From Octopus sinensis (taxonomy: Eukaryota): DNA of 52,026 nt. Location of the stretch: positions 1 through 52,026 of the forward strand of contig NW_021833809.1 in assembly GCF_006345805.1 (NCBI RefSeq), read 5' to 3'. Positions 8,383-49,005 of the stretch are shown piece after piece (position 1 is the first letter of the stretch; every line of letters starts with the position of its first letter). The notes beneath the pieces were generated by a model that made no database searches, was not told the DNA's origin, and saw nothing but the letters and a program-made list of their open reading frames with translations. The position numbers were made by a program, and so were the translations under genes.

Positions 8383-8765
8383 TACTCTTTACTCTTTTAC
8401 TCTTTTACTTGTTTCAGTCATTTGACTGCGGCCATGCTGGAGCACCGCCTTTTTAATCGAGCAACTCAACCCCGGGACTTGTTCTTTTGTAAGCCCAGTA
8501 CTTACTCTATCGGACTCTTTTGCCAAACCGCTAAGTAACGGGGACGTAAACACACCAGCATCGGTTGCCAAGCAATGCTAGGGGGACAAACACAGACACA
8601 CAAACACATGACGGGCTTCTTTCAGTTTCCGTCTACTAAATCCACTCACGAGGCTTTGGTCGGTCCGAGGCTATAGTAGAAGACACTTGCCCAAGGTGCC
8701 ACGCAGTGGGACTGAACCTGGAACCATGTGGTTGGTAAGCAAGCTACTTACCACACAGCCACTCC
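8383..8765 (-). mobile_element. CORE-like SINE, full length
   Basis: Reverse complement of the 2378/9341 element. Confidence 0.85.
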
Positions 8766-8902
8766 TGCAATATATAATTTAAACACATATTTCATGTATC
8801 AAAAAAAATGTCAGTTCCAAAATATTGGAAATGGTGATCAATAAATCTAAAGCAGTATCATTCTTTGAGCTAAGAAATTTAAGGAAAAACAAAAAAGTCT
8901 TC

Positions 8903-9340: not shown

Positions 9341-9735
9341 AGGAGTGGCTGTGTGGTAAGTATCTTGCTTACCAGCCACATGGTTCAGGGTTCAGTCCCA
9401 CTGCGTGGCACCTTGGGCAAGTGTCTTCTACTATAGCCTCGGGCCGACCAAAGCCTTGTGAGTGGATTTGGTAGACGGAAACTGAAAGAAGCCCGTCGTA
9501 TATATGTATATATATATATATGCGTGTGTGTGTTTGTATGTCTGTGTTTGTCCCCCTAGCATTGCTTGACAACCGATGCTGGTGTGTTTATGTCCCCGTT
9601 ACTTAGCAGTTCGGCAAAAGAGACCGATAGAATAAGTACTGGGCTTACAAAGGAATAAGTCCCGGGGTCAAGTTGCTCGATTAAAAAGGCGGTGCTCCAG
9701 CATGGCCGCAGTCAAAGTAAGAGAGTAAAAGAGTT
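9341..9735 (+). mobile_element. CORE-like SINE, full length
   Basis: Same family as 2378. Confidence 0.85.
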
Positions 9736-11995: not shown

Positions 11996-12199
11996 ACGCT
12001 GTATGTGACTAACATCAGACTGTGTGTCACCTAAAGTTTACAGCGTTGACATATATCTTGACTTTGATTTTCTTAATCAATAGATAATTAAGATCAATCA
12101 ATTAGTCAAGTACTCAACCAACATATTATGACGGGAAACACTGATAGTCTTGCTCTACAAATGTTCGTGGACAGACTTTGGACTTGAGTCTGTCATGAT

Positions 12200-12700
12200 T
12201 TGTAGGTCACATGAGCTGGCTTCTGGCTTGCCTCATGCCCTTGCTTGATGGGGCTGAGGTCATTCCAGGTTAGTGGTCCCAGAGGCATCATCGTGTGTAG
12301 ACCCAACCAGGTCCACCAGTGTTCTCCATTGCTGGCTGTCTCATGCCCTTGCTTGATGGGGCTGAGGTCATTCCAGGTTAGTGGTCCCAGAGGCATCATC
12401 GTGTGTAGACCCAACCAGGTCCACCAGTGTTCTCCATTGCTGGCTGTCTCATGCCCTTGCTTGATGGGGCTGAGGTCATTCCAGGTTAGTGGTCCCAGAG
12501 GCATCATCGTGTGTAGACCCAACCAGATCCACCAGTGTTCTCCATTGCTGGCTGTCTCATGCCAGCCCCTCTGCATCCTCCAGGTGACATCAAGCCTCTG
12601 GAGTTCATCCCTGGTTACATCCAGCCATCTGGTGTGGGGCCTGCCAATAGGCAGCTGCTGCACTGAATGAGAGTAAAGCCCTGGTAGGATGATCTAATAG
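12200..12700 (-). mobile_element. RTE-clade LINE 3' end, terminal 108 bp triplicated
   Basis: HPTRALLSF..IGRPHTRWLDVTRDELQRLDVTW(fs)EDAEGLA*DSQQWRTLVDLVGS resembles an RTE C-terminus; 108-bp units start at 12232, 12340 and 12448. Confidence 0.7.
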
Positions 12701-14440: not shown

Positions 14441-15047
14441 AGTGGTGGTGTTGGTGGGGATGATGGTGATGCTGATAACAATGGCAATGACGATGTTATT
14501 TTTCTAGGTTAAATTATGTCGAAGCATATAAATAGAGATGCCTGAGAAAAAAAACTATTTATATATATGTGTGTGTGTGTGTATGTGTCTGTGTGTGTGT
14601 GTGGTTGTCTGTGTGTGTGATTGTCTGTGTGTGTGATTGTCTGTGTGTGTATATGTATCCTGTTGTATTCTTGTTGACAGATTGGTCAACAAGATAAGAT
14701 GAATAAACTCTTTCTTCCATTGTCCAAAAATTATTGCTGTTCCCGCACACAGCCAAGATACAAATCTGGTAACATTGTATCACTGTGTTTTGTGTTCTGT
14801 GACATTATCTGGTTTTCACAGACCAGCATCATAATCCACAGAGTTACACAATATGATAGCAGCAGAAATGAAATATTTCATGGTACCTAGCAACAGCTAA
14901 TCATGCTGGGAATGTAATACATAAAGAAATTCGTGAATGAAAATGAAAGTGAAACTAAAATATAGTTAGTCTAGTAAATATGCTGGGAGTGGCTGTAAGC
15001 TGAGGCATGGATGAATGGTGGAGAACTTGGCTTTCCAGCAATGTGGT

Positions 15048-16010
15048 TTGAGCTGGCAGAATCGTTAGCACGCTGGGTGAAATGCGTAGCGGTATTTCGT
15101 CTGCCATTACGTTCTGAGTTCAAATTCTACCGAGGTCGACTTTGCCTTTCATCCTTTCGGAATCGATAAATTAAGTACCAGTTATGCACTGGGGTCGATG
15201 TAATCAACTTAATCGCTTTGTCTGTCCTTGTTTGTTCCCTTTGTGTTTAGCCCCTTGTGGGTAGTAAAGAAATAGGTATTTCGTCTGCCATTACGTTCTG
15301 AGTTCAAATTCGTCCGAGGTCGACTTTGCCTTTCATCCTTTCGGGGTCGATAAATTAAGTACCAGTTATGCACTGGGGTCGATGTAATCAACTTAATCGC
15401 TTTGTCTGTCCTTGTTTGTTCCCTTTGTGTTTAGCCCCTTGTGGGTAGTAAAGAAATAGGTATTTCGTCTGCCATTACGTTCTGAGTTCAAATTCGTCCG
15501 AGGTCGACTTTGCCTTTCATCCTTTCGGAATCGATAAATTAAGTACCAGTTATGCACTGGGGTCGATGTAATCAACTTAATCGCTTTGTCTGTCCTTGTT
15601 TGTTCCCTTGTGTTTAGCCCCTTGTGGTAGTAAAGAAATAGGTATTTCGTTTGCCGTTACGTTCTGAGTTCAAATTCGTCCGAGGTCGACTTTGCCTTTC
15701 ATCCTTTCGGGGTCGATAAATTAAGTACCAGTTATGCACTGGGGTCGATGTAATCAACTTAATCGCTTTGTCTGTCCTTGTTTGTTCCCTTTGTGTTTAG
15801 CCCCTTGTGGGTAGTAAAGAAATAGGTATTTCGTTTGCCGTTACGTTCTGAGTTCAAATTCGTCCGAGGTCGACTTTGCCTTTCATCCTTTCGGGGTCGA
15901 TAAATTAAGTACCAGTTATGCACTGGGGTCGATGTAATCAATTTAATCCGTTTGTCTGTCCTTGTTTTTCCTCTCTGTGTTTAGCCCCTTGTGGGTCGTA
16001 AAGAAATAGG
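15048..16010 (+). mobile_element. Deu/Nin-domain SINE: one head followed by 5 tandem ~184-bp body units
   Basis: Unit starts at 15092, 15276, 15460, 15642 and 15826; the GCCTTTCATCCTTTCGGGGTCGATAAATTAAGTACC motif resembles the Deu/Nin domain. Confidence 0.85.
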
Positions 16011-16056
16011 TTATGGGTTCAGTCCAAGTGCAGGGCACCTTGACCAAATATCTTCT

Positions 16057-16472
16057 TATTTCTTTATTGCCCACAAGAGGCTAAACACAGAGGGGACAAA
16101 CAAGGACAGACAAACGGATTAAGTCGATTATATCGACCCCAGTACATAACTGGTACTTAATTTATCGACCCCAAAAGGATTAAAGGCAAAGTCGACCTCG
16201 GCAGAATTTGAACCCAGAATGTAACAGCAGACGAAATATCTATTTCTTTACTACCCACAAGGGGCTAAACACAGAGGGAACAAACAAGGACAGACAAATG
16301 GATTAAGTCGATTATATCGACCCCAGTGTGTAACTGGTACTTATTTAATCGACCCCGAAAGTATGAAAGGCAAGGTCGACCTCGGACGAATTTGAACTCA
16401 GAACGTAACAGCAGATGAAATACCGCTAAGTATTTCACCCAGCATATTTCGCCAGCTCACCGTCTTTATCTT
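16057..16472 (-). mobile_element. Deu/Nin-domain SINE dimer with an 18-bp TSD, inside an old CORE-like SINE
   Basis: CTTGACCAAATATCTTCT at 16039-16056 and 16473-16490. Confidence 0.85.
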
Positions 16473-16776
16473 CTTGACCAAATATCTTCTACTGTAGCTC
16501 TGAGCTTACTAAAACTTTATCACCTCATCTTTATATGTTAATCTTGGCTTTCCTGCTGAAGAAAGCTTCACCAATGTAAATTATTTTATTTACTAAAGAT
16601 TGCTTGAAACCATGGTACAGGAAATAGAGGGTAAATGTTTTTATTTTTCATTCCCTTTCGAAATTACCCCTAATAGTGATTTGTAGTTTAACTACTCCTT
16701 CTAGCGGGTCAGATGTCCTGTTATGTTCATCTCTTATGTATTTAAATGTACACTGTATTTATATATATATATATTT

Positions 16777-17162
16777 TTACTTGTTTCAGTCATTTGACTG
16801 CGGCCATGCTGGAGCACCGCCTTTAGTCAAGCAAATCGAACCCAGGACTTATTCTTTGTAAGCCCAGTACTTATTCGGTCTCTTTTGCCGAACCGCTAAG
16901 TTACAGGGACATAAACACAGCAGCATCGGTTGTCAAGCGATGTTGGGGAGGACAAACACAGACACACAAACACAGACACACATACACACAAATATATATA
17001 TACATATATACGACAGGCTTCTTTCAGTTTCCGTCTACCAAATCCACTCACAAGGCATTGGTTGGCCCAGGGCTATAGCAGAAGATACTTGCCCAAGATG
17101 CCATGCAGTGGGACTGAATCCGGAACCATGTGGTTGGTTAGCAAGCTACTTGCCACACAGCC
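16777..17162 (-). mobile_element. CORE-like SINE
   Basis: Family match. Confidence 0.85.
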
Positions 17163-17522
17163 ACACACACACACATATATAGGCATCATGTATTTGTGAG
17201 TGCATCATAAGTGCATTGCACATAACACTCACACCTTGAGTCACTTCTTTAAATATCTTGCAACTTATTAATGTTTGTATAATACTCTCATGTATTAAGT
17301 CCATGTCTGGTGCAAACTAATTATCATAATTTATTCACATTCCTATGTACAAAATTTTAATGGATTAAATTTTGCCAATGGAGACTAGCTCTAGTTTCTT
17401 TGGATTAATTTACAAGATGTACGAGTTTCCTTGTCTTCAGCAGAAACACTCCAATGAAACACTTTGTTCATCTTTATTATAAGCTTTTGAATATACCAAA
17501 AAAAAAAAAAAAATTTCTGTGC

Positions 17523-21655: not shown

Positions 21656-21765
21656 TTGATCGATTTCGATTCTGATTCCCTTTCCAATTTACTTTCTAAT
21701 GATCATCCCTTTCCTTGCTACCAGTAATCTCTCCCTGTCCCCTCAGCTACATCTTACGGCTACCA

Positions 21766-21968
21766 TGGCAGAAACATTAGCAATGCGTAGTCGTATTTTG
21801 TCTGCCGTTACATTCTGTGTTCAAATTCCGCCGAGGTCGACTTTGCCTTTCATCCTATAAATTAAGTACCAGTTACGCACTGGGGTCGATGTAATTGACT
21901 TAATCCGTTTGTCTGTCATTGTTTGTCCCCTCTGTGTTTAGCCCCTTGTGGGCAATAAAGAAACACAT
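21766..21968 (+). mobile_element. Deu/Nin-domain SINE
   Basis: Family match. Confidence 0.8.
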
Positions 21969-21985
21969 ATCTCATTCTTAATACC

Positions 21986-22226
21986 TATTTTTTAAATTTT
22001 TTACTACCCACAAGGGGCTAAACACAGAGTGGACAAACAAGGACAGACAAACGGATTAAGTCGATTGTATCGACCCCAGTGCGTAACTGGTACTTAATTA
22101 ATCGACCTCGAAAGGATGAAAGGAAATGTCGACCTCGGTGGAATTTGAACTCAGACCGTATCGGCAGACGAAATACCGCTGAGTATTTCGCCCGGCTTGC
22201 TAACGATTCTGCCAGCTCGCCGCCTT
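21986..22226 (-). mobile_element. Full-length Deu/Nin-domain SINE directly 3' of the 5S copy
   Basis: Head AAGGCGGCGAGCTGGCAGAATCGTTAG, domain and A-rich tail. Confidence 0.9.
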
Positions 22227-22240
22227 AAACAATGTGCTAT

Positions 22241-22358
22241 GCTTACTGCACCTAGGTTTCCCAAGCGGTCACCCATCTAAGTACTGATTAGGCTCGAGGT
22301 TGCTTAACTTCGGTGATCAGACCAGAACTGGTGCTTTCAGCGTGACCTGGCCGTAAGC
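22241..22358 (-). rRNA. 5S rRNA: Full-length 5S rRNA-like copy, probably a pseudogene or SINE head
   Basis: GCTTACGGCCA...GATCACCGAAGTTAAGCAAC..AGTACTTAGATGGGTGACCGCTTGGGAA..GGTGCAGTAAGC, 118 nt; helix I pairs; box A/C recognisable; no T4 terminator; single copy. Confidence 0.9.
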
Positions 22359-22565
22359 AATCTCATTCTTAACACCCTTTCATATCTGCCACTGATGCTG
22401 CCCACACACACATATTTGATTGCCACAAACACACTAAATCCATCCCAACATACCTCTGACCTCCATCTCTGTCACTGTGTTTCTCACTCTCTTCTCCTCC
22501 TACTCACCCACTCCACACGTAATCTCCTTACTCCTACTCTACCTACACTTTTATCATACTGCAAT

Positions 22566-22723: not shown

Positions 22724-22867
22724 TTGTGTCAATTTTTTTTTTTAATATCTTACCTTACTTCCAGTTGCCATTCATCATGATCATCATTGTTTTCATCAGC
22801 TTCATCTTAACATCAACTTTTCTATAACAGCATTGGTCAGACAGACCAATGTCAAGTGACTCTCTCT

Positions 22868-23288
22868 CTTTACTCTTTTACTTGTTTTTTCAGTCATGTG
22901 ACTGTGGCCATGCTGGAGCACCGCCTTTAGTCGAGCAAATCGACCCCAGGACTTATTATTTGTAAGCCCAGTACTTATTCTATCGGTCTCTTTTGCTGAA
23001 CCGCCAAGTTATGGGAAAGTAAACACACCAGCATCGGTTGTCAAGTGATGTTAGGGGGGGGGGAAACACAAACACAGACACACAAACATATACACACAAA
23101 CATACACGCACGCATATACATATACATATATACAACAGGCTTCTTTCAGTTTCCGTCTACCAAATCACTCACAAGGCTTTGGTCGGCCCGAGGCTATAGT
23201 AGAAGACACTTGCCCAAGGTGCCACGTTGTGGGATTGAACCCGGAACCATGTGGTTGGTAAGCAAGCTACTTACCACACAGCCACTCC
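22868..23288 (-). mobile_element. CORE-like SINE (duplicated at 24940-25346 and partly at 26850-27150)
   Basis: Family match. Confidence 0.85.
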
Positions 23289-23395
23289 TACGCTAAGATG
23301 ATTCAGCAGAGAAACCAAGTGTTTCAACTGGTTTTTTGGCAGTCGGTTGAAAGGGAGAATCAACAGGAAGAGAAAACGTCTAATTTATTTGGACA

Positions 23396-23785: not shown

Positions 23786-24423
23786 TTTATTTGGACAACT
23801 TGCTTCAGGACAGTAGAATGGCAAACATTAACATATTAAGAACATTGCATGGGGTCTCTGCCATGATGGATGGCATGCTCCCATGAAATCATCAAAGTGT
23901 CCTGGAGGAGGGCCAGAATGAACTAACTATTCTGCTGTTCCCTATCCTGAATTACTCTTTCTTCTTTCACCTCCTTCTCCCCATAAACTGATACTTACCC
24001 CTGACAACACCTCCACCTTTGTTCACCATTCACTACATTCACCTCTGACCCCTATCGGTTTCCTCTCACCCCTTTTACAAACTTACCCACCCTCCCTAAT
24101 CATCTCTTCATATTCTCATTTATACTCACCTTCTGATCCCTACAGAGAACCCTTTGACACCTTGTCATCACCATCTTGGTTATCCTTCCATCTACCCCCA
24201 TCCTTATATAATTCAAGATAGCCTTGTACCTCCACTATAGTAAGACACCAGTTCCTGTCTCTCTTCAGACTTCAGCCTCTCGACACCAGGCATAGAGCCA
24301 CTTTCCTATCTACTACACACCTACAGAGTCGAGGGGGATATCAATAGATCCAACATATGGTGAACATCAGAGAAATAAAGAAAAAGATGTAAATAGCAAT
24401 ATAACAATACCATTCATGTACAA

Positions 24424-24496
24424 GCCTCCATAGCTCAGAGGTTAGAGCACTGGTCTTGTAAACCAGGGGTCGTGAGTTCGATTCTCACTGGGGGCT
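24424..24496 (+). tRNA. trnT-UGU: tRNA-Thr(UGU)
   Basis: Identical to 22651. Confidence 0.95.
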
Positions 24497-24593
24497 TTGT
24501 GTCAATTTTTTTTTTTAATATCTTACCTTACTTCCAGTTGCCGTTCGTCATGATCATCATTGTTTTTATCAGCTTCATCTTAACATCCACAAC

Positions 24594-24644
24594 AGCACTG
24601 GTCTTGTAAACCAGGAGTCGTGAGTTCGATTCTCACTGGGGGCT
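24594..24644 (+). pseudogene. 5'-truncated tRNA-Thr(UGU) (positions 23-73), G45A
   Basis: Lacks the 5' acceptor strand, D-loop and A box. Confidence 0.9.
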
Positions 24645-24743
24645 TTGTGTCAATTTTTTTTTTTTTTATATCTTACCTTACTTCCAGTTGCCATTCATCA
24701 TGGTCATCATTGTTTTCATCAGCTTCATCTTAACATCCACAAC

Positions 24744-24794
24744 AGCACTGGTCTTGTAAACCAGGGGTCGTGAGTTCGATTCTCACTGGGGGCT
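24744..24794 (+). pseudogene. 5'-truncated tRNA-Thr(UGU) (positions 23-73)
   Basis: 150 bp after the previous fragment. Confidence 0.9.
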
Positions 24795-26482
24795 TCGTGT
24801 CAATTTTTTTTTTTATATCTTACCTTACTTCCAGTTGCCATTCATCATGGTCATCATTGTTTTCATCAGCTTCATCTCAACGTCCACTTTTCTATGTCAG
24901 CATTGGTCAAACAGACTCTGTCGAATGACTCTCTCTCTCTTTACTCTTTTACTTGTTTTTTTCAGTCATGTGACTGTGGCCATGCTGGAGCACTGTCTTT
25001 AGTCGAGCAAATCGACCTCAGGACTTATTCTTTGTAAGCCTAGTACTTATTCCATCGGTCTCTTTTGCCGAACTGCTAAGTAACGGGGACGTAAACACAC
25101 CGGCATCGGTTGTCAAGCGATGTTAGGGGGACACAAACACAGACATACAAACATATACACACACACACACATATATATATACATATATACGACGGGCTTC
25201 TTTCAGTTTCTGTCTACCAAATTCACTCACAAGGCTTTGGTCGGCCCGAGGCTATAGTAGAAGACACTTGCCCAAGGTGCCACGCAGTGGGACTGGACCC
25301 GGAATCATGTGGTTGGTTAGCAAGCTACTTACCACACAACCACTCCTACGCTAAGATGATTCAGCAGAGAAACCATGTGTTTCAACTGGTTTTTTTGGTG
25401 TTTGATTGAAAGGGAGAATCAACAGGAAGAGAAAACGTCTAATTTATTTGGACATGGATGGATGGAAGCACTCCGTCGGTTACGACGACGAGGGTTCCGG
25501 TTGATCCAAATCAATGGAACAGCCTGCTCATGAAATTAACGTGTAAGTGGCTGAGCACTCCACAGACACGTGTACCCTTAACGTAGTTCTCGGGGATATT
25601 CAGCGTGACACAGAGAGTGGCAAGGCCGGCCCTTTGAAATACAGGTACAACAGAAATAGGAAGTAAGAGTGAGAGAAAGTTGTGGTGAAAGAGTACAGCA
25701 GGGATCACCACCATCCCCTGCCGGAGACTCATGGAGCTTTAGGTGTTTTTGCTCAATAAACGCTCACAACACTCAGTCTGGGAATTGAAACCGCGATCCT
25801 ATGACTGCGAGTCCACTGCCCTAACCACTGGGCCATTGCGCCTCCTTTATTTGGACAACTTGCTTCAGGACAGTAGAATGGCAAACATTAACATATTAAG
25901 AACATTGCATGGGGTCTCTGCCATGATGGATGGCATGCTCCCATGAAATCATCAAAGTGTCCTGGAGGAGGGCCAGAATGAACTAACTATTCTGCTGTTC
26001 CCTATCCTGAATTACTCTTTCTTCTTTCACCTCCTTCTCCCCATAAACTGATACTTACCCCTGACAACACCTCCACCTTTGTTCACCATTCACTACATTC
26101 ACCTCTGACCCCTATCGTTTCCTCTCACCCCTTTTACAAACTTACCCACCCTCCCTAATCATCTCTTCATATTCTCATTTATACTCACCTTCTGATCCCT
26201 ACAGAGAACCCTTTGACACCTTGTCATCACCATCTTGGTTATCCTTCCATCTACCCCCATCCTTATATAATTCAAGATAGCCTTGTACCTCCACTATAGT
26301 AAGACACCAGTTCCTGTCTCTCTTCAGACTTCAGCCTCTCGACACCAGGCATAGAGCCACTTTCCTATCTACTACACACCTACAGAGTCGAGGGGGATAT
26401 CAATAGATCCAACATATGGTGAACATCAGAGAAATAAAGAAAAAGATGTAAATAGTAATATAACAATACCATTCATGTACAA

Positions 26483-46607: not shown

Positions 46608-47492
46608 ATGAGTACAATGAAGAATTCCGGATAGGGGTAGGGGTCCACCAAGGATCATTCCTCAGCCCCCTCTTATTTATCATAGTCCTCCAGGCAATAA
46701 CAGAGGAATTCAAGACAGGATGCCCCTGGGAGCTCCTCTAGACTGATGACCTTGCTGAGTCCCTATCAGAACTCAAGGAGAAGTTTCAGGTGTGGAAGCA
46801 AGGATTAGAATCGAAGGGCCTTAGAGTCAACCTAGCTAAAACCAAAGTCCTAATAAGTAGGAAGGCAGACAAATCACAAATTCCTTCAGGTAGATGGCCC
46901 TGCTCGATCTGTAGAAAAGGCGTAGGTAGAAACTCTATAAGATGTACCCAGTGTAAGCTATGGACACATAAGAGGTGCAGCAATATCAAAAGAAAGCTAA
47001 CTGGGAAGATAGTTTTTTGTATGTGGCAAATGCTCAGGTGCTATAAACACAGAAAATGTGCAGAGAACAACTTCTGTCACAGTCGAAGGAGAAAAACTAG
47101 AAGTAGTTGATAGCTTCCATTACCTAGGGGACCAAGTCAGTAGCAGAGATGGATGCTCTGAAAGAGTAGCTGCTAAAATAAGAATATCCTGGTCAAAGTT
47201 CAGAGAGCTCTTACCTCTGCTTGAGACAAAAGGCCTCTCGCTCAGAGTGAAAGGTAGACTGTATGATGCATGTGTATGAACAGCCATGCTACATGGCAGT
47301 GAAACATGGGCTGTGATTGCTGAGGACATGCGTAAGCTTGCAAGGAATGAAGCCAGTATGCTCTGCTGGATGTGTAATGTCAGTACGCATACACGACAGA
47401 GTATAAGCGCCCTGAGAGAAAAGTTGGACCTAAGAAGCATCAGTTGTGGTGTGCAAGAGAGACGACTGCGCTGGTATGGTCATGTGTTGTGA
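46608..47492 (+). mobile_element. Decayed RTE-clade LINE reverse transcriptase fragment
   Basis: GVGVHQGSFLSPLLF..LL*TDD (dead YADD)..GLRVNLAKTK..FHYLG..HGSETW..RRLRWYGHV; stops and frameshifts. Confidence 0.9.
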
Positions 47493-47619: not shown

Positions 47620-48242
47620 TAAGGTAACGAGCTGGCAGAATCATTAGCGCACCAAGCAAAATGCTTGCTGGCATTTCATCTGTCTTTACGTTCTGAGTTC
47701 AGATTCCACTGAGGTTGACTTTGCCTTTCATCCTTAAGGGGTCGATAGATTAAATACCTATTTCTTAAAATAAATTAAATACCTATTGCCCACAAGGGGC
47801 TAAACACAGAGGGGACAAACAAGGACAGACATAGGTATAAAGTCGATTATATCGACCCCAGTGCGTAACTGGTACTTAATTTAATCGACCCCGAAAGGAT
47901 GAAAGGCAAAGTTGACCTCGGCGGAATTTGAACTCAGAACGTAACGGCAGACGAAATACCGCCAAGCATTTCGCCTGGCATGCTAACAATTCTGCCAGCT
48001 CGCCTTTCATACTTAAGGGGTCGATAGATTAAATACCTATTTCTTTATTACCCACAAGGGGCTAAACACAGAGGGGACAAACAAAGACAGACATAGGTAT
48101 TAAGTCTGGTACTTAATTTATCGACCCCGAAAGGATGAAAGGCAAAGTCGACCTCGGCGGAATTTGAACTCAGAATGTAACAGCAGACGAAATACCGCTA
48201 AGCATTTCACCCGGCATGCTAACGTTTCTGCCAGCTCGCCGA
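47620..48242. mobile_element. Nested/tandem Deu/Nin-domain SINEs (one +, two -)
   Basis: Family match. Confidence 0.8.
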
Positions 48243-49005
48243 TAGATTAAATACCAGCTGTATCTCAGGGTTGATCTGTGCCTAGAGTAGAAAAAATATA
48301 TATATAGCTGTGTGTATATGCGTGAGTGTTTGTGTGTGTGTGTATGTGTGCGTGTCTTTATGCTCGTGTTTGTTTCCCCACCACCACCACCACCACTTGA
48401 CAACCGATGTTAGTTTGTTTACGTTTCTTTAACTTAATGGTTAAACATAACTTAGTGGTTCAACATACAGAGACCGATAAAATAAGAACCAGGCTTAAAC
48501 TACCTTCAAGGTAGTGCTCCAGCATGGCCGCAGTCTAATGACTGAAACAAGATAAAACATATTCATCTGAAAGTCAGGTGGGTGGGGGGACCCTTGTGTG
48601 GGTACACACTTTTTCTTCCTTTCTTTTTTTTGTACTGTATTTTTTTTTTTTGCCAATACGCTGTGATTTGCTGGGGATTTGACTGCTATTTCTGCAGGTC
48701 TAGGGATCATTTTAAGATGAGATCAAAACGGTTTGTTTACTAAAATTGTATATGTAATAGCAGCAGCAGCGGCAATAGCAGCAGCAGTCATAGTAGTAGT
48801 AGTTGTTGTAGTAGTTGTAGTAGTAGTAGTAGTAGTAGTAGTAGCGGCAGCAGCAGCAGTGTCATTTCTAATATAATTTTGGTTATAGTAGTGGTAGTAG
48901 TGGTAGTAGTAGTAGTGGTAGTAGTAGTGGTAGTAGTAGTAGTAGTGGTAGTGTTGGCAGCACCAATTTAATTTGTAATATAATTTTGTTGTATTGCTGC
49001 TGCTG

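What the first reader, a model, noticed from the sequence alone, without database searches (positions are those of the whole stretch)
21969..22376. 5S rRNA-tRNA-head-Deu/Nin SINE chimera apparently retroposed as one unit
Seen on the minus strand: a full 118-nt 5S copy (22358-22241), a 14-nt linker with no T4 terminator, then a complete Deu/Nin-type SINE (22226-21986) with tail. ATCTCATTCTTAA(T/C)ACC flanks the whole unit at 21969-21985 and 22360-22376 (13 bp exact, 16/17 overall), starting 1 nt from the 5S +1. The SINE has no TSD of its own. Other SINEs here have TSDs of 12 and 18 bp. Known: vertebrate AmnSINE1 has a 5S + tRNA-like + Deu-domain architecture and SINE3 families are 5S-headed. 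Inference: an independent origin of that architecture in a mollusc, via read-through from a terminator-less 5S or via template switching; possibly a nascent SINE3-type family.
Basis: partly seen in the sequence, partly recalled or inferred. Interest (0 to 1): 0.75.

Follow-up and report, generated by a model that had tools for sequence, protein, structure and literature searches.

The report
5S rRNA–SINE composite retrocopy in octopus
A decayed copy of 5S ribosomal RNA joined head-to-tail to a common octopus SINE was pasted into the genome in one retroposition event; this kind of chimera is already known, so it is a tidy example rather than a new class.

Summary
On the minus strand there is a full-length 5S rRNA copy (22358..22240; Rfam 84.2 bits), then an 18-nt spacer with no T4 run, then a full-length copy of a SINE that occurs about 20 times in this window (22221..21986). 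The whole unit is bracketed by ATCTCATTCTTAA(T/C)ACC. This 17-mer occurs nowhere else in the window. Neither module has a repeat of its own.

The window comes from an octopus. A LINE fragment in it matches Octopus bimaculoides proteins at 83-86% identity.

Insertion of the 5S-SINE unit as one piece by a LINE reverse transcriptase is well supported. How the two RNAs were joined is not resolved. I slightly favour a template switch from the SINE RNA's 5' end onto an unprocessed 5S transcript. The alternative is a copy of a 5S-headed SINE lineage or a read-through transcript.

No searchable DNA collection contained this SINE, so one-off versus family could not be tested. Published octopus repeat tables already list SINE/5S families without describing their structure. 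The tRNA origin of the head and the Deu/Nin class of the core could not be verified here.

Verdict: a real feature, a new member of a known kind, of modest interest.

The parts
22360..22376 (-). 5' copy of the flanking direct repeat (sense strand GGTGTTAAGAATGAGAT). The unambiguous target-site duplication is AAGAATGAGAT, 22370..22360.
22359..22359 (-). One extra T between the repeat and 5S position +1. It is either a filler nucleotide or flanking sequence.
22240..22358 (-). Full-length 5S rRNA copy of 119 nt. It is decayed: 5 consensus base pairs are non-canonical and 1 nt is deleted in each of two places. Box C-like AGATGGGTGACCGCTTGGG lies at 22278..22260.
22227..22239 (-). 13-nt spacer TAGCACATTGTTT, ending in TTT. 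Proposed to be the 3' trailer of an unprocessed 5S primary transcript (inference). It is unique in the window.
22222..22226 (-). AAGGC: 5 nt between the spacer and the SINE family's consensus 5' end. Either filler added at the join or a short 5' leader.
21986..22221 (-). Full-length SINE. A-box-like TGGCAGAATCG lies at 22214..22204, and B-box-like GAGTTCAAATTCC at 22152..22140. The conserved core is at 22123..22069 and the A-rich tail at 22007..21985.
21969..21985 (-). 3' copy of the flanking direct repeat (sense strand GGTATTAAGAATGAGAT). Its first hexamer GGTATT may have been copied from the SINE RNA's 3' end rather than from the target.
21743..21972 (+). Older SINE copy in the opposite orientation. 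The composite inserted at its very 3' end. The two SINEs form 63-nt inverted arms that are 92% complementary.

Best explanation
This is a dead, one-event composite retrocopy.

A LINE reverse transcriptase nicked the target at ...TTAACACC|C on the plus strand and primed on the 3' tail of a SINE RNA. It copied that RNA to its 5' end. Instead of finishing, it then jumped onto the 3' end of a second pol III transcript: a 5S rRNA still carrying a 13-nt, U-terminated 3' trailer. It copied that RNA to its +1 nucleotide. Second-strand synthesis across the staggered break produced the 11-17 bp target-site duplication.

The copy has since decayed by about 5% and is not a working gene.

Shown: the anatomy, the single duplication, the full length of both modules, and the shared SINE tail. 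Inferred: the template switch itself, the identification of the 13-nt spacer as a 5S trailer, and the one-off status.
For: One non-repetitive 16/17 direct repeat encloses 5S + spacer + SINE and occurs nowhere else in the window. No repeat flanks either module alone.

The 5S part runs from model position 1 to 120, as expected for a copied transcript rather than a gene fragment. The SINE part reaches the family's consensus 5' end and carries the family tail.

The spacer ends in TTT, as a pol III primary transcript would. 5S primary transcripts carry a U-rich 3' extension that is bound by La and trimmed later (PMC6315592). From my own knowledge, the Drosophila 5S precursor has about 15 extra 3' nucleotides.

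The same window holds another composite retrocopy of this SINE: a dimer whose two units are only 89% alike yet sits inside one perfect 18-bp duplication. This suggests that joined templates are common with this reverse transcriptase.

The single mismatch in the repeat lies in the hexamer GGTRTT. That hexamer matches the sequence following the tail at the SINE's internal unit joins (AAGAAATAG|GTATTT). It also matches the start of another copy's duplication (GGTATTTAATCTATC). This fits priming by microhomology.

Private substitutions in the SINE part are 12/241 (5.0%), within the 1.4-5.9% range of the neighbouring copies. This is compatible with 1 mismatch in 17 between the repeat copies.

Template switching from a tRNA-type SINE RNA to 5S rRNA is the published model for 5S+tRNA composite heads (Nishihara 2006 as cited in PMC4824008, and PMC4758252; HaSE3, PMC3272025). 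5S/LINE-1 chimeras are catalogued in primates (bioRxiv 10.1101/2025.02.02.635956).
Against: No other octopus locus could be examined, so uniqueness of the junction is assumed, not shown.

The 13-nt spacer is not known to be the native trailer of octopus 5S genes, because no octopus 5S gene was available.

TTT is shorter than a canonical T4 or longer terminator.

Five further nucleotides (AAGGC) at the join need a filler or leader explanation.

In primates, 5S segments in L1 chimeras are mostly truncated and antisense, unlike this full-length sense copy.

Published octopus repeat tables list SINE/5S families, which raises the prior that this copy belongs to a propagating lineage.
Confidence: 0.45

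Rival explanations
1. The copy belongs to a propagating 5S-headed SINE lineage, or is the first retrocopy of a read-through transcript from a master locus where a terminator-less 5S copy lies just upstream of a resident SINE. Pol III starts at 5S +1 and runs through the 18-nt spacer and the T4-free SINE. The RNA is then retroposed through the SINE tail.
For: The whole 373-nt unit lacks any T4 run, so a pol III transcript starting at 5S +1 could span it. In this reading the spacer needs no special explanation. Box C-like and box A-like 5S promoter elements are largely preserved.

Octopus repeat annotations already contain SINE/5S classes: 0.030% and 0.039% of repeat copies in O. bimaculoides and O. 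vulgaris, and 4 families covering 9.83 Mb in O. vulgaris.

One 5S-bearing copy among about 20 copies of this SINE in 52 kb is not out of line with those ratios.
Against: There is only one copy in the window, and no second junction was found anywhere that could be searched.

The published tables give class labels from automated classifiers with no structures. They may reflect 5S rDNA or mis-assigned plain SINE copies. For example, the 7 'recent 5S insertions' average 6 kb each.

Retroposed 5S promoters are thought to be weak without upstream signals (PMC3272025). The intact A/B-box-like promoter inside the SINE would tend to produce 5S-less progeny.
Confidence: 0.4
2. Two sequential, independent insertions occurred: a 5S retropseudogene and a SINE landed next to each other, and the flanking repeat belongs to only one of them.
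For: The window is densely packed with SINE copies, including nested and adjacent ones. The composite itself landed at the end of an older SINE.
Against: The repeat brackets both modules. The inner module, whichever it is, has no duplication of its own (best 5 of 6). 5S RNA alone has neither a poly(A) tail nor the SINE tail that would let the LINE machinery prime on it. Both modules have the same orientation and are full-length, separated by 18 nt.
Confidence: 0.07
3. The 5S copy is a resident 5S rRNA gene of this pol III gene cluster, with a SINE inserted downstream of it.
For: The window is a cluster of 19 tRNA-Thr genes, that is, pol III-transcribed chromatin. The copy is full-length with recognisable promoter boxes.
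Against: It has no T-run terminator, whereas most of the 19 tRNA genes have a run of six or more T within about 12 nt downstream. Five consensus base pairs are broken. It is a single copy, not an array. The target-site duplication starts 1 nt upstream of +1, so no native upstream sequence came with it.
Confidence: 0.02

Closest known systems
LINE-mediated chimeric retrocopies made by reverse-transcriptase template switching (U6/L1, 5S/L1 and similar; Buzdin et al. 2003; bioRxiv 10.1101/2025.02.02.635956)
   Same: Two unrelated RNAs are fused in one insertion. The 3' partner supplies the tail used for priming and the 5' partner is a small pol III RNA. One target-site duplication surrounds the whole. 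Such chimeras usually do not propagate.
   Different: Here the 3' partner is a full-length non-poly(A) SINE rather than a LINE-1 3' end. The host is an octopus, whose common LINEs are RTE-BovB, Dong-R4 and CR1. The 5S part is full-length and sense with a 13-nt 3' extension, whereas primate 5S/L1 chimeras are mostly truncated and antisense.
AmnSINE1 and related vertebrate DeuSINEs with a 5S + partial tRNA composite head (Nishihara et al. 2006, as described in PMC4758252 and PMC4824008)
   Same: The order of modules is the same: 5S-derived, then tRNA-type SINE head, then conserved core, then tail. The proposed origin is also the same: a template switch from a tRNA-type SINE to 5S rRNA.
   Different: [quoted passage not shown] Here the SINE head is complete and only one copy is known. 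The Deu identity of the core was not verified. Any relation would be convergent, not by descent.
HaSE3 of Helicoverpa armigera and other invertebrate SINE3 families (PMC3272025; PMC10886601)
   Same: A 5S-derived 5' part is joined to the body and tail of a co-resident tRNA-type SINE (HaSE1) in a protostome. It is interpreted as a template-switch chimera, and its copies carry TSDs of 8-19 bp.
   Different: In HaSE3 the 5S part replaces the tRNA head and the element exists as a family in several species. Here the 5S is added in front of an intact head, with a spacer, and family status is unknown.
SINE/5S classes in published octopus repeat annotations (PMC8967140 Table S2; PMC13282606 Table S1)
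   Same: They come from the same host group and are 5S-classified short retroposons in genomes dominated by tRNA-Core and tRNA-Deu SINEs.
   Different: Those entries are classifier labels with no published structure, junction or consensus. Whether any of them is this 5S-spacer-SINE arrangement is unknown.

Membership tests
Chimeric (bipartite) retrocopy made in one retroposition event | Two unrelated RNA-derived modules in the same orientation, enclosed by a single target-site duplication | tested here: met
   A 16/17 repeat encloses 5S + SINE. The word is unique in the window, and there were 0 hits in 1.03 million shuffled placements.
Chimeric (bipartite) retrocopy made in one retroposition event | Neither module has its own target-site duplication | tested here: met
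   Best flanking match for the SINE alone or the 5S alone was 5 of 6.
Chimeric (bipartite) retrocopy made in one retroposition event | The 3' module carries the tail through which the family is normally retroposed | tested here: met
   The tail region ...CCCCTTGTGGGTAGTAAA...AATAG aligns with the tails of the other copies.
Chimeric (bipartite) retrocopy made in one retroposition event | The 5' module ends at the natural 3' end of its RNA | tested here: inconclusive
   13 extra nt ending in TTT follow the 5S. This fits an unprocessed precursor, but no octopus 5S gene was available for comparison.
Chimeric (bipartite) retrocopy made in one retroposition event | The junction is unique (a non-propagating one-off) | not testable with these tools
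   This SINE is absent from viral contigs and metagenome contigs. The protein-database trick found nothing.
SINE3 / 5S-derived SINE family (SINEBase criteria, PMC3531059) | At least 60% identity to 5S rRNA over at least 60 nt in the head | tested here: met
   Full-length Rfam 5S match at 84.2 bits, against a gathering score of 38.
SINE3 / 5S-derived SINE family (SINEBase criteria, PMC3531059) | [quoted passage not shown] | not testable with these tools
   One copy in 52 kb, and no octopus genome was searchable by DNA. Literature tables list SINE/5S classes in octopus without structures.
SINE3 / 5S-derived SINE family (SINEBase criteria, PMC3531059) | Body and tail beyond the 5S part | tested here: met
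   236 nt of SINE follow the 5S and spacer.
AmnSINE1-type DeuSINE (5S + tRNA-derived + Deu domain) | tRNA-derived segment after the 5S part | tested here: inconclusive
   A-box-like and B-box-like motifs sit at a suitable spacing. However, the tRNA covariance model gave no hit at E<=10 on this or two other heads, and ARAGORN reported none.
AmnSINE1-type DeuSINE (5S + tRNA-derived + Deu domain) | Deu (or Nin-DC) central domain | not testable with these tools
   No reference consensus was available. [quoted passage not shown]
AmnSINE1-type DeuSINE (5S + tRNA-derived + Deu domain) | The 5S promoter has replaced a truncated tRNA promoter | tested here: not met
   The SINE head is complete from its consensus 5' end, with both boxes present.
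Functional 5S rRNA gene | T-run terminator directly downstream, intact helices, arrayed copies | tested here: not met
   There is no T4 in or after the copy, 5 base pairs are broken, and it is a single copy.

The most novel reading that the evidence does not exclude
This copy is a member, or a direct early descendant of the founder, of an octopus-specific SINE lineage. That lineage would have convergently acquired the vertebrate AmnSINE1 architecture (5S + tRNA-type head + conserved core). The copy would be caught at the stage where both pol III promoters are still complete, which is the intermediate predicted but not observed in the template-switch model for how SINEs change promoters. It might correspond to the undescribed 'SINE/5S' families in octopus repeat tables.
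Probability: 0.3. Interest if true: 0.5.

Novelty: new member of a known kind. Interest (0 to 1): 0.3.

Why it matters
SINEs are thought to acquire new promoters and modules through exactly this kind of fusion. A clean example, with both parental modules full-length and a single target-site duplication, illustrates the first step of that process in a lineage where SINEs make up about a tenth of the genome.

If the same junction proves to be multi-copy, it would document a convergent origin of the 5S + tRNA-type head in cephalopods. It would also give the unlabelled 'SINE/5S' entries in octopus repeat libraries a structure.

If the junction is unique, it is one more chimeric retrocopy. Its use would then be mainly as evidence that the octopus LINE machinery switches templates, as mammalian L1 does.

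Tried and rejected
1. Looking for other junction copies.
- A gapped pattern (5S 3' block, N30-60, SINE head) found nothing in metagenome contigs.
- The SINE core as a control was also absent from metagenome contigs and viral contigs, so these nulls are uninformative.
- The same gapped pattern gave one hit in genome contigs. It lies inside a bacterial coding region of a Vicinamibacterales MAG and is a chance match.

2. Searching junction-spanning peptides from four reading frames in the 5.8-billion-protein collection gave no hit at E<=10. The collection evidently lacks ORF calls from octopus non-coding DNA.

3. Looking up the largest nearby ORF to find the source contig or alleles found nothing on record.

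4. Fetching octopus DNA through LINE-fragment homologues gave a 23-kb O. sinensis piece with one distantly related SINE (75% identity) and no 5S. Two contigs from another animal lacked the SINE altogether. This is too little sequence to bound a family's frequency.

5. Verifying the tRNA origin of the head with Rfam at E<=10 on three heads gave no tRNA hit.

6. I tried to find a Deu or Nin-DC reference consensus. No supplementary text was held for the two mollusc SINE papers, and a sequence-string search of the literature returned nothing relevant.

7. The literature search for '5S-Deu-L2' together with octopus or cephalopod found nothing in main texts. The class does appear in a supplement, but only for squids, not octopuses.

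8. My first null for the flanking repeat, using random placements in the real window, was inflated by microsatellites and tandem repeats. I replaced it with a uniqueness filter and shuffles.

9. The miRNA-family hits around 21900-22060 are artefacts of the hairpin formed by two inverted SINE copies.

Full report
**What is there**

Read on the minus strand, the region contains the following, in order:
- GGTGTTAAGAATGAGAT (22376..22360).
- One T (22359).
- A 119-nt 5S rRNA copy (22358..22240).
- TAGCACATTGTTT (22239..22227).
- AAGGC (22226..22222).
- A SINE (22221..21986).
- GGTATTAAGAATGAGAT (21985..21969).

The 5S copy matches Rfam RF00001 over model positions 1-120 at 84.2 bits, against a gathering score of 38. 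It is the only 5S sequence in the 52-kb window. Five consensus base pairs are non-canonical and there are two single-nucleotide deletions, so it is a decayed copy.

The SINE matches about 19 other copies or fragments in the window at 74-91% identity. Alignment of the longer copies places the family's 5' end at GGCGAGCTGGCAG and its tail at ...CCCCTTGTGGGYARTAAAGAAAYAG. By both criteria the copy in the composite is full-length.

**Is the flanking repeat real?**

- The two 17-mers match at 16 of 17 positions, with 13 consecutive identities.
- The word occurs nowhere else in the window, even with three mismatches allowed. It is therefore not part of the SINE, the 5S or any other local repeat.
- In 1.03 million placements in shuffled sequence no 16/17 match arose. 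In the real window, matches of that quality at a similar spacing were confined to tandem repeats.
- Neither the SINE alone nor the 5S alone, with or without the spacer, is flanked by any repeat better than 5 of 6.
- Other insertions of this SINE in the window do have target-site duplications. Examples are a perfect 18-mer around a SINE dimer and a 15-mer around the copy at 48041-48241.

**Host and setting**

The window has no real protein genes. It is a cluster of 19 tRNA-Thr genes. Many share an upstream motif, and most have a run of six or more T shortly downstream. The cluster is embedded in SINE copies and microsatellites.

A LINE reverse-transcriptase/PHD fragment at 46742-47107 finds its best named relatives in Octopus bimaculoides (83-86% identity) and O. 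sinensis.

The composite inserted at the very 3' end of an older copy of the same SINE lying in the opposite orientation (21743-21972). The two copies form 63-nt inverted arms, and these explain the spurious miRNA-family hits.

**How it arose: what is shown**

The following points together indicate a single target-primed reverse transcription event:
- One duplication surrounds both modules and neither has its own.
- The two modules share one orientation.
- The SINE tail lies at the 3' end.
- The 5S sequence starts exactly at +1.

The event began on the SINE tail and ended at the 5' end of a 5S-initiated or 5S RNA template.

Sequential insertion would need a duplication-free insertion of one module exactly beside the other. 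It would also need retroposition of a 5S RNA that has neither poly(A) nor the SINE tail.

A resident 5S gene is excluded for three reasons. There is no terminator, whereas nearly all the neighbouring tRNA genes have one. Several helices are broken. The duplication begins 1 nt upstream of +1.

**How it arose: what is inferred**

Two routes give the same product.

(a) Template switch. The reverse transcriptase reaches the 5' end of the SINE RNA and continues on the 3' end of a 5S transcript.
- The 13-nt spacer ends in TTT, as pol III primary transcripts do.
- 5S primary transcripts carry a U-rich 3' extension that is bound by La and trimmed later (PMC6315592).
- From my own knowledge, the Drosophila 5S precursor has about 15 extra nucleotides.
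- The spacer could therefore be the native trailer of an unprocessed octopus 5S RNA, and AAGGC could be filler at the jump.

(b) Read-through or master copy. Pol III starts at the 5S +1 of a terminator-less 5S copy lying 18 nt upstream of a SINE and transcribes both. This is possible because the whole 373-nt unit lacks any T4 run.

Circumstantial support for (a) comes from the same window. A SINE dimer at 16049-16466 has units only 89% alike, yet it lies inside one perfect 18-bp duplication. This suggests that different RNAs were joined before or during insertion.

A 1+4-unit array at 15042-16011 has the same join (...AAGAAATAG|GTATTTCG...).

The single mismatch between the two copies of the composite's repeat lies in the hexamer GGTRTT. 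The 3' copy reads GGTATT. That hexamer matches the sequence following the tail at those internal joins. It also matches the start of another copy's duplication (GGTATTTAATCTATC). This suggests that the target primer anneals to the SINE RNA's 3' end by microhomology. The unambiguous duplication would then be the 11-bp AAGAATGAGAT. This rests on three cases and remains an inference.

**Age**

Substitutions private to the composite's SINE part are 12 of 241 (5.0%), within the 1.4-5.9% range of the neighbouring copies. This is compatible with one difference in 17 between the repeat copies and with the level of damage in the 5S part. Nothing suggests that the 5S part was already old when it was copied.

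**One-off or family?**

This could not be tested.
- The SINE core is absent from the viral and metagenome DNA collections. The absence of the junction pattern there therefore says nothing.
- The single genome-contig hit is a chance match in a bacterial gene.
- Junction-spanning peptides found nothing in the protein collection.
- The octopus DNA reachable through protein look-ups amounted to 23 kb.

**Comparison with what is known**

Template switching from a tRNA-type SINE to 5S rRNA is the standard model for composite 5S+tRNA heads in vertebrate DeuSINEs such as AmnSINE1 (as described in PMC4758252, and PMC4824008). The same model is applied to HaSE3 in a moth (PMC3272025). SINE3-type elements are considered to have arisen several times (PMC10886601). 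5S/LINE-1 chimeras make up about 10% of catalogued L1 chimeras in primates, though there they are mostly truncated and antisense.

For octopuses, published repeat tables already list 5S-class SINEs:
- SINE/5S accounts for 0.030% and 0.039% of repeat copies in O. bimaculoides and O. vulgaris. tRNA-Deu accounts for 15.0% and 6.1% (PMC8967140 Table S2).
- O. vulgaris has four '5S' families covering 9.83 Mb, against 60.9 Mb of tRNA-Deu (PMC13282606 Table S1).

Neither paper describes the elements, and the labels come from classifiers. They may or may not correspond to this arrangement, but they raise the prior for a family and lower the novelty of the idea.

**Membership**

The element meets every testable feature of a one-event chimeric retrocopy. 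It meets the head and body criteria of a 5S-derived SINE, but the copy-number criterion could not be tested.

It does not meet one feature of the AmnSINE1 type, because the tRNA-type head is complete rather than truncated. Its tRNA origin and its Deu/Nin core could not be verified. No tRNA model hit appeared at E<=10 on three heads, and no reference domain sequence was available.

**Verdict**

This is a real and well-delimited composite retrocopy of 5S rRNA and a SINE in an octopus genome. It is best read as a one-event product of the LINE machinery. I give the one-off template-switch chimera about 0.45, and a copy of a 5S-headed lineage or read-through source about 0.40. It is a new member of a known kind and of modest interest, unless a genome-wide search shows a family.

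Noticed in passing
window 5243-36201: Dense cluster of 19 tRNA-Thr genes (17 anticodon TGT, 2 CGT) on both strands. Many share an upstream motif (aaatagcaa.ataacaat), and most have a run of six or more T a few nucleotides downstream. Many are embedded in a repeated unit of several hundred bp.
   Followed up: partly
window 15042-16011 (+): SINE multimer: one full SINE followed by four further body-plus-tail units of 184 bp, about 97% alike. Each unit is joined as ...AAGAAATAG|GTATTTCGTCTGCC (tail joined to SINE position ~50).
   Followed up: partly
window 16039-16490 (element on - strand, 16466..16049): SINE dimer: a full copy plus one body/tail unit, the two units only 89% alike. It is enclosed by one perfect 18-bp target-site duplication, CTTGACCAAATATCTTCT (16039-16056 and 16473-16490). 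11 filler nucleotides lie between the duplication and the SINE 5' end.
   Followed up: partly
window 47744-48255: Two adjacent SINE copies (48241..48041 and 48004..47789, - strand), each followed by the same about 35 nt of an antisense SINE core. GATAGATTAAATACC occurs three times (47744, 48023, 48241). This suggests insertion into an older inverted SINE followed by local duplication.
   Followed up: partly
window 21900-21962 / 21997-22059: The composite's SINE and the older inverted SINE form 63-nt arms that are 92% complementary, 34 nt apart. This hairpin gives sub-threshold hits to several plant and animal miRNA families, which are artefacts.
   Followed up: yes
window 46742-47107 (+): Fragment of a LINE reverse transcriptase with a PHD-type zinc finger. 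Its best named relatives are Octopus bimaculoides proteins (83-86% identity) and O. sinensis LOC115212110.
   Followed up: partly
window 12193-12663 (-): ORF resembling the C-terminal end of a LINE protein (…PIGRPHTRWLD…), followed by three tandem copies of a 35-residue unit (HETASNGEHWW.WLGLHTMMPLGPLTWNDLSPIKQG).
   Followed up: no
window 24594-24790: Local tandem duplication of the region just downstream of the tRNA-Thr gene at 24424-24496 (blocks at 24340-24590, 24594-24740 and 24744 onwards). It carries a partial tRNA-like match at 24721-24786 (29.5 bits).
   Followed up: no
window, e.g. 2377-2806, 8392-8766, 9341-9714, 16775-17164, 22865-23290, 25210-25459: A second repeated element of about 400 bp (72-92% identity between copies) lies close to many of the tRNA-Thr genes. 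It was not classified here and may be the tRNA-Core type SINE that dominates octopus genomes.
   Followed up: no
L004 1925-1984 (Vicinamibacterales MAG JBFWUK010000001.1): The only genome contigs match to the 5S-gap-SINE pattern lies in a GC-rich bacterial coding region. It is a chance match with no 5S or SINE around it.
   Followed up: yes
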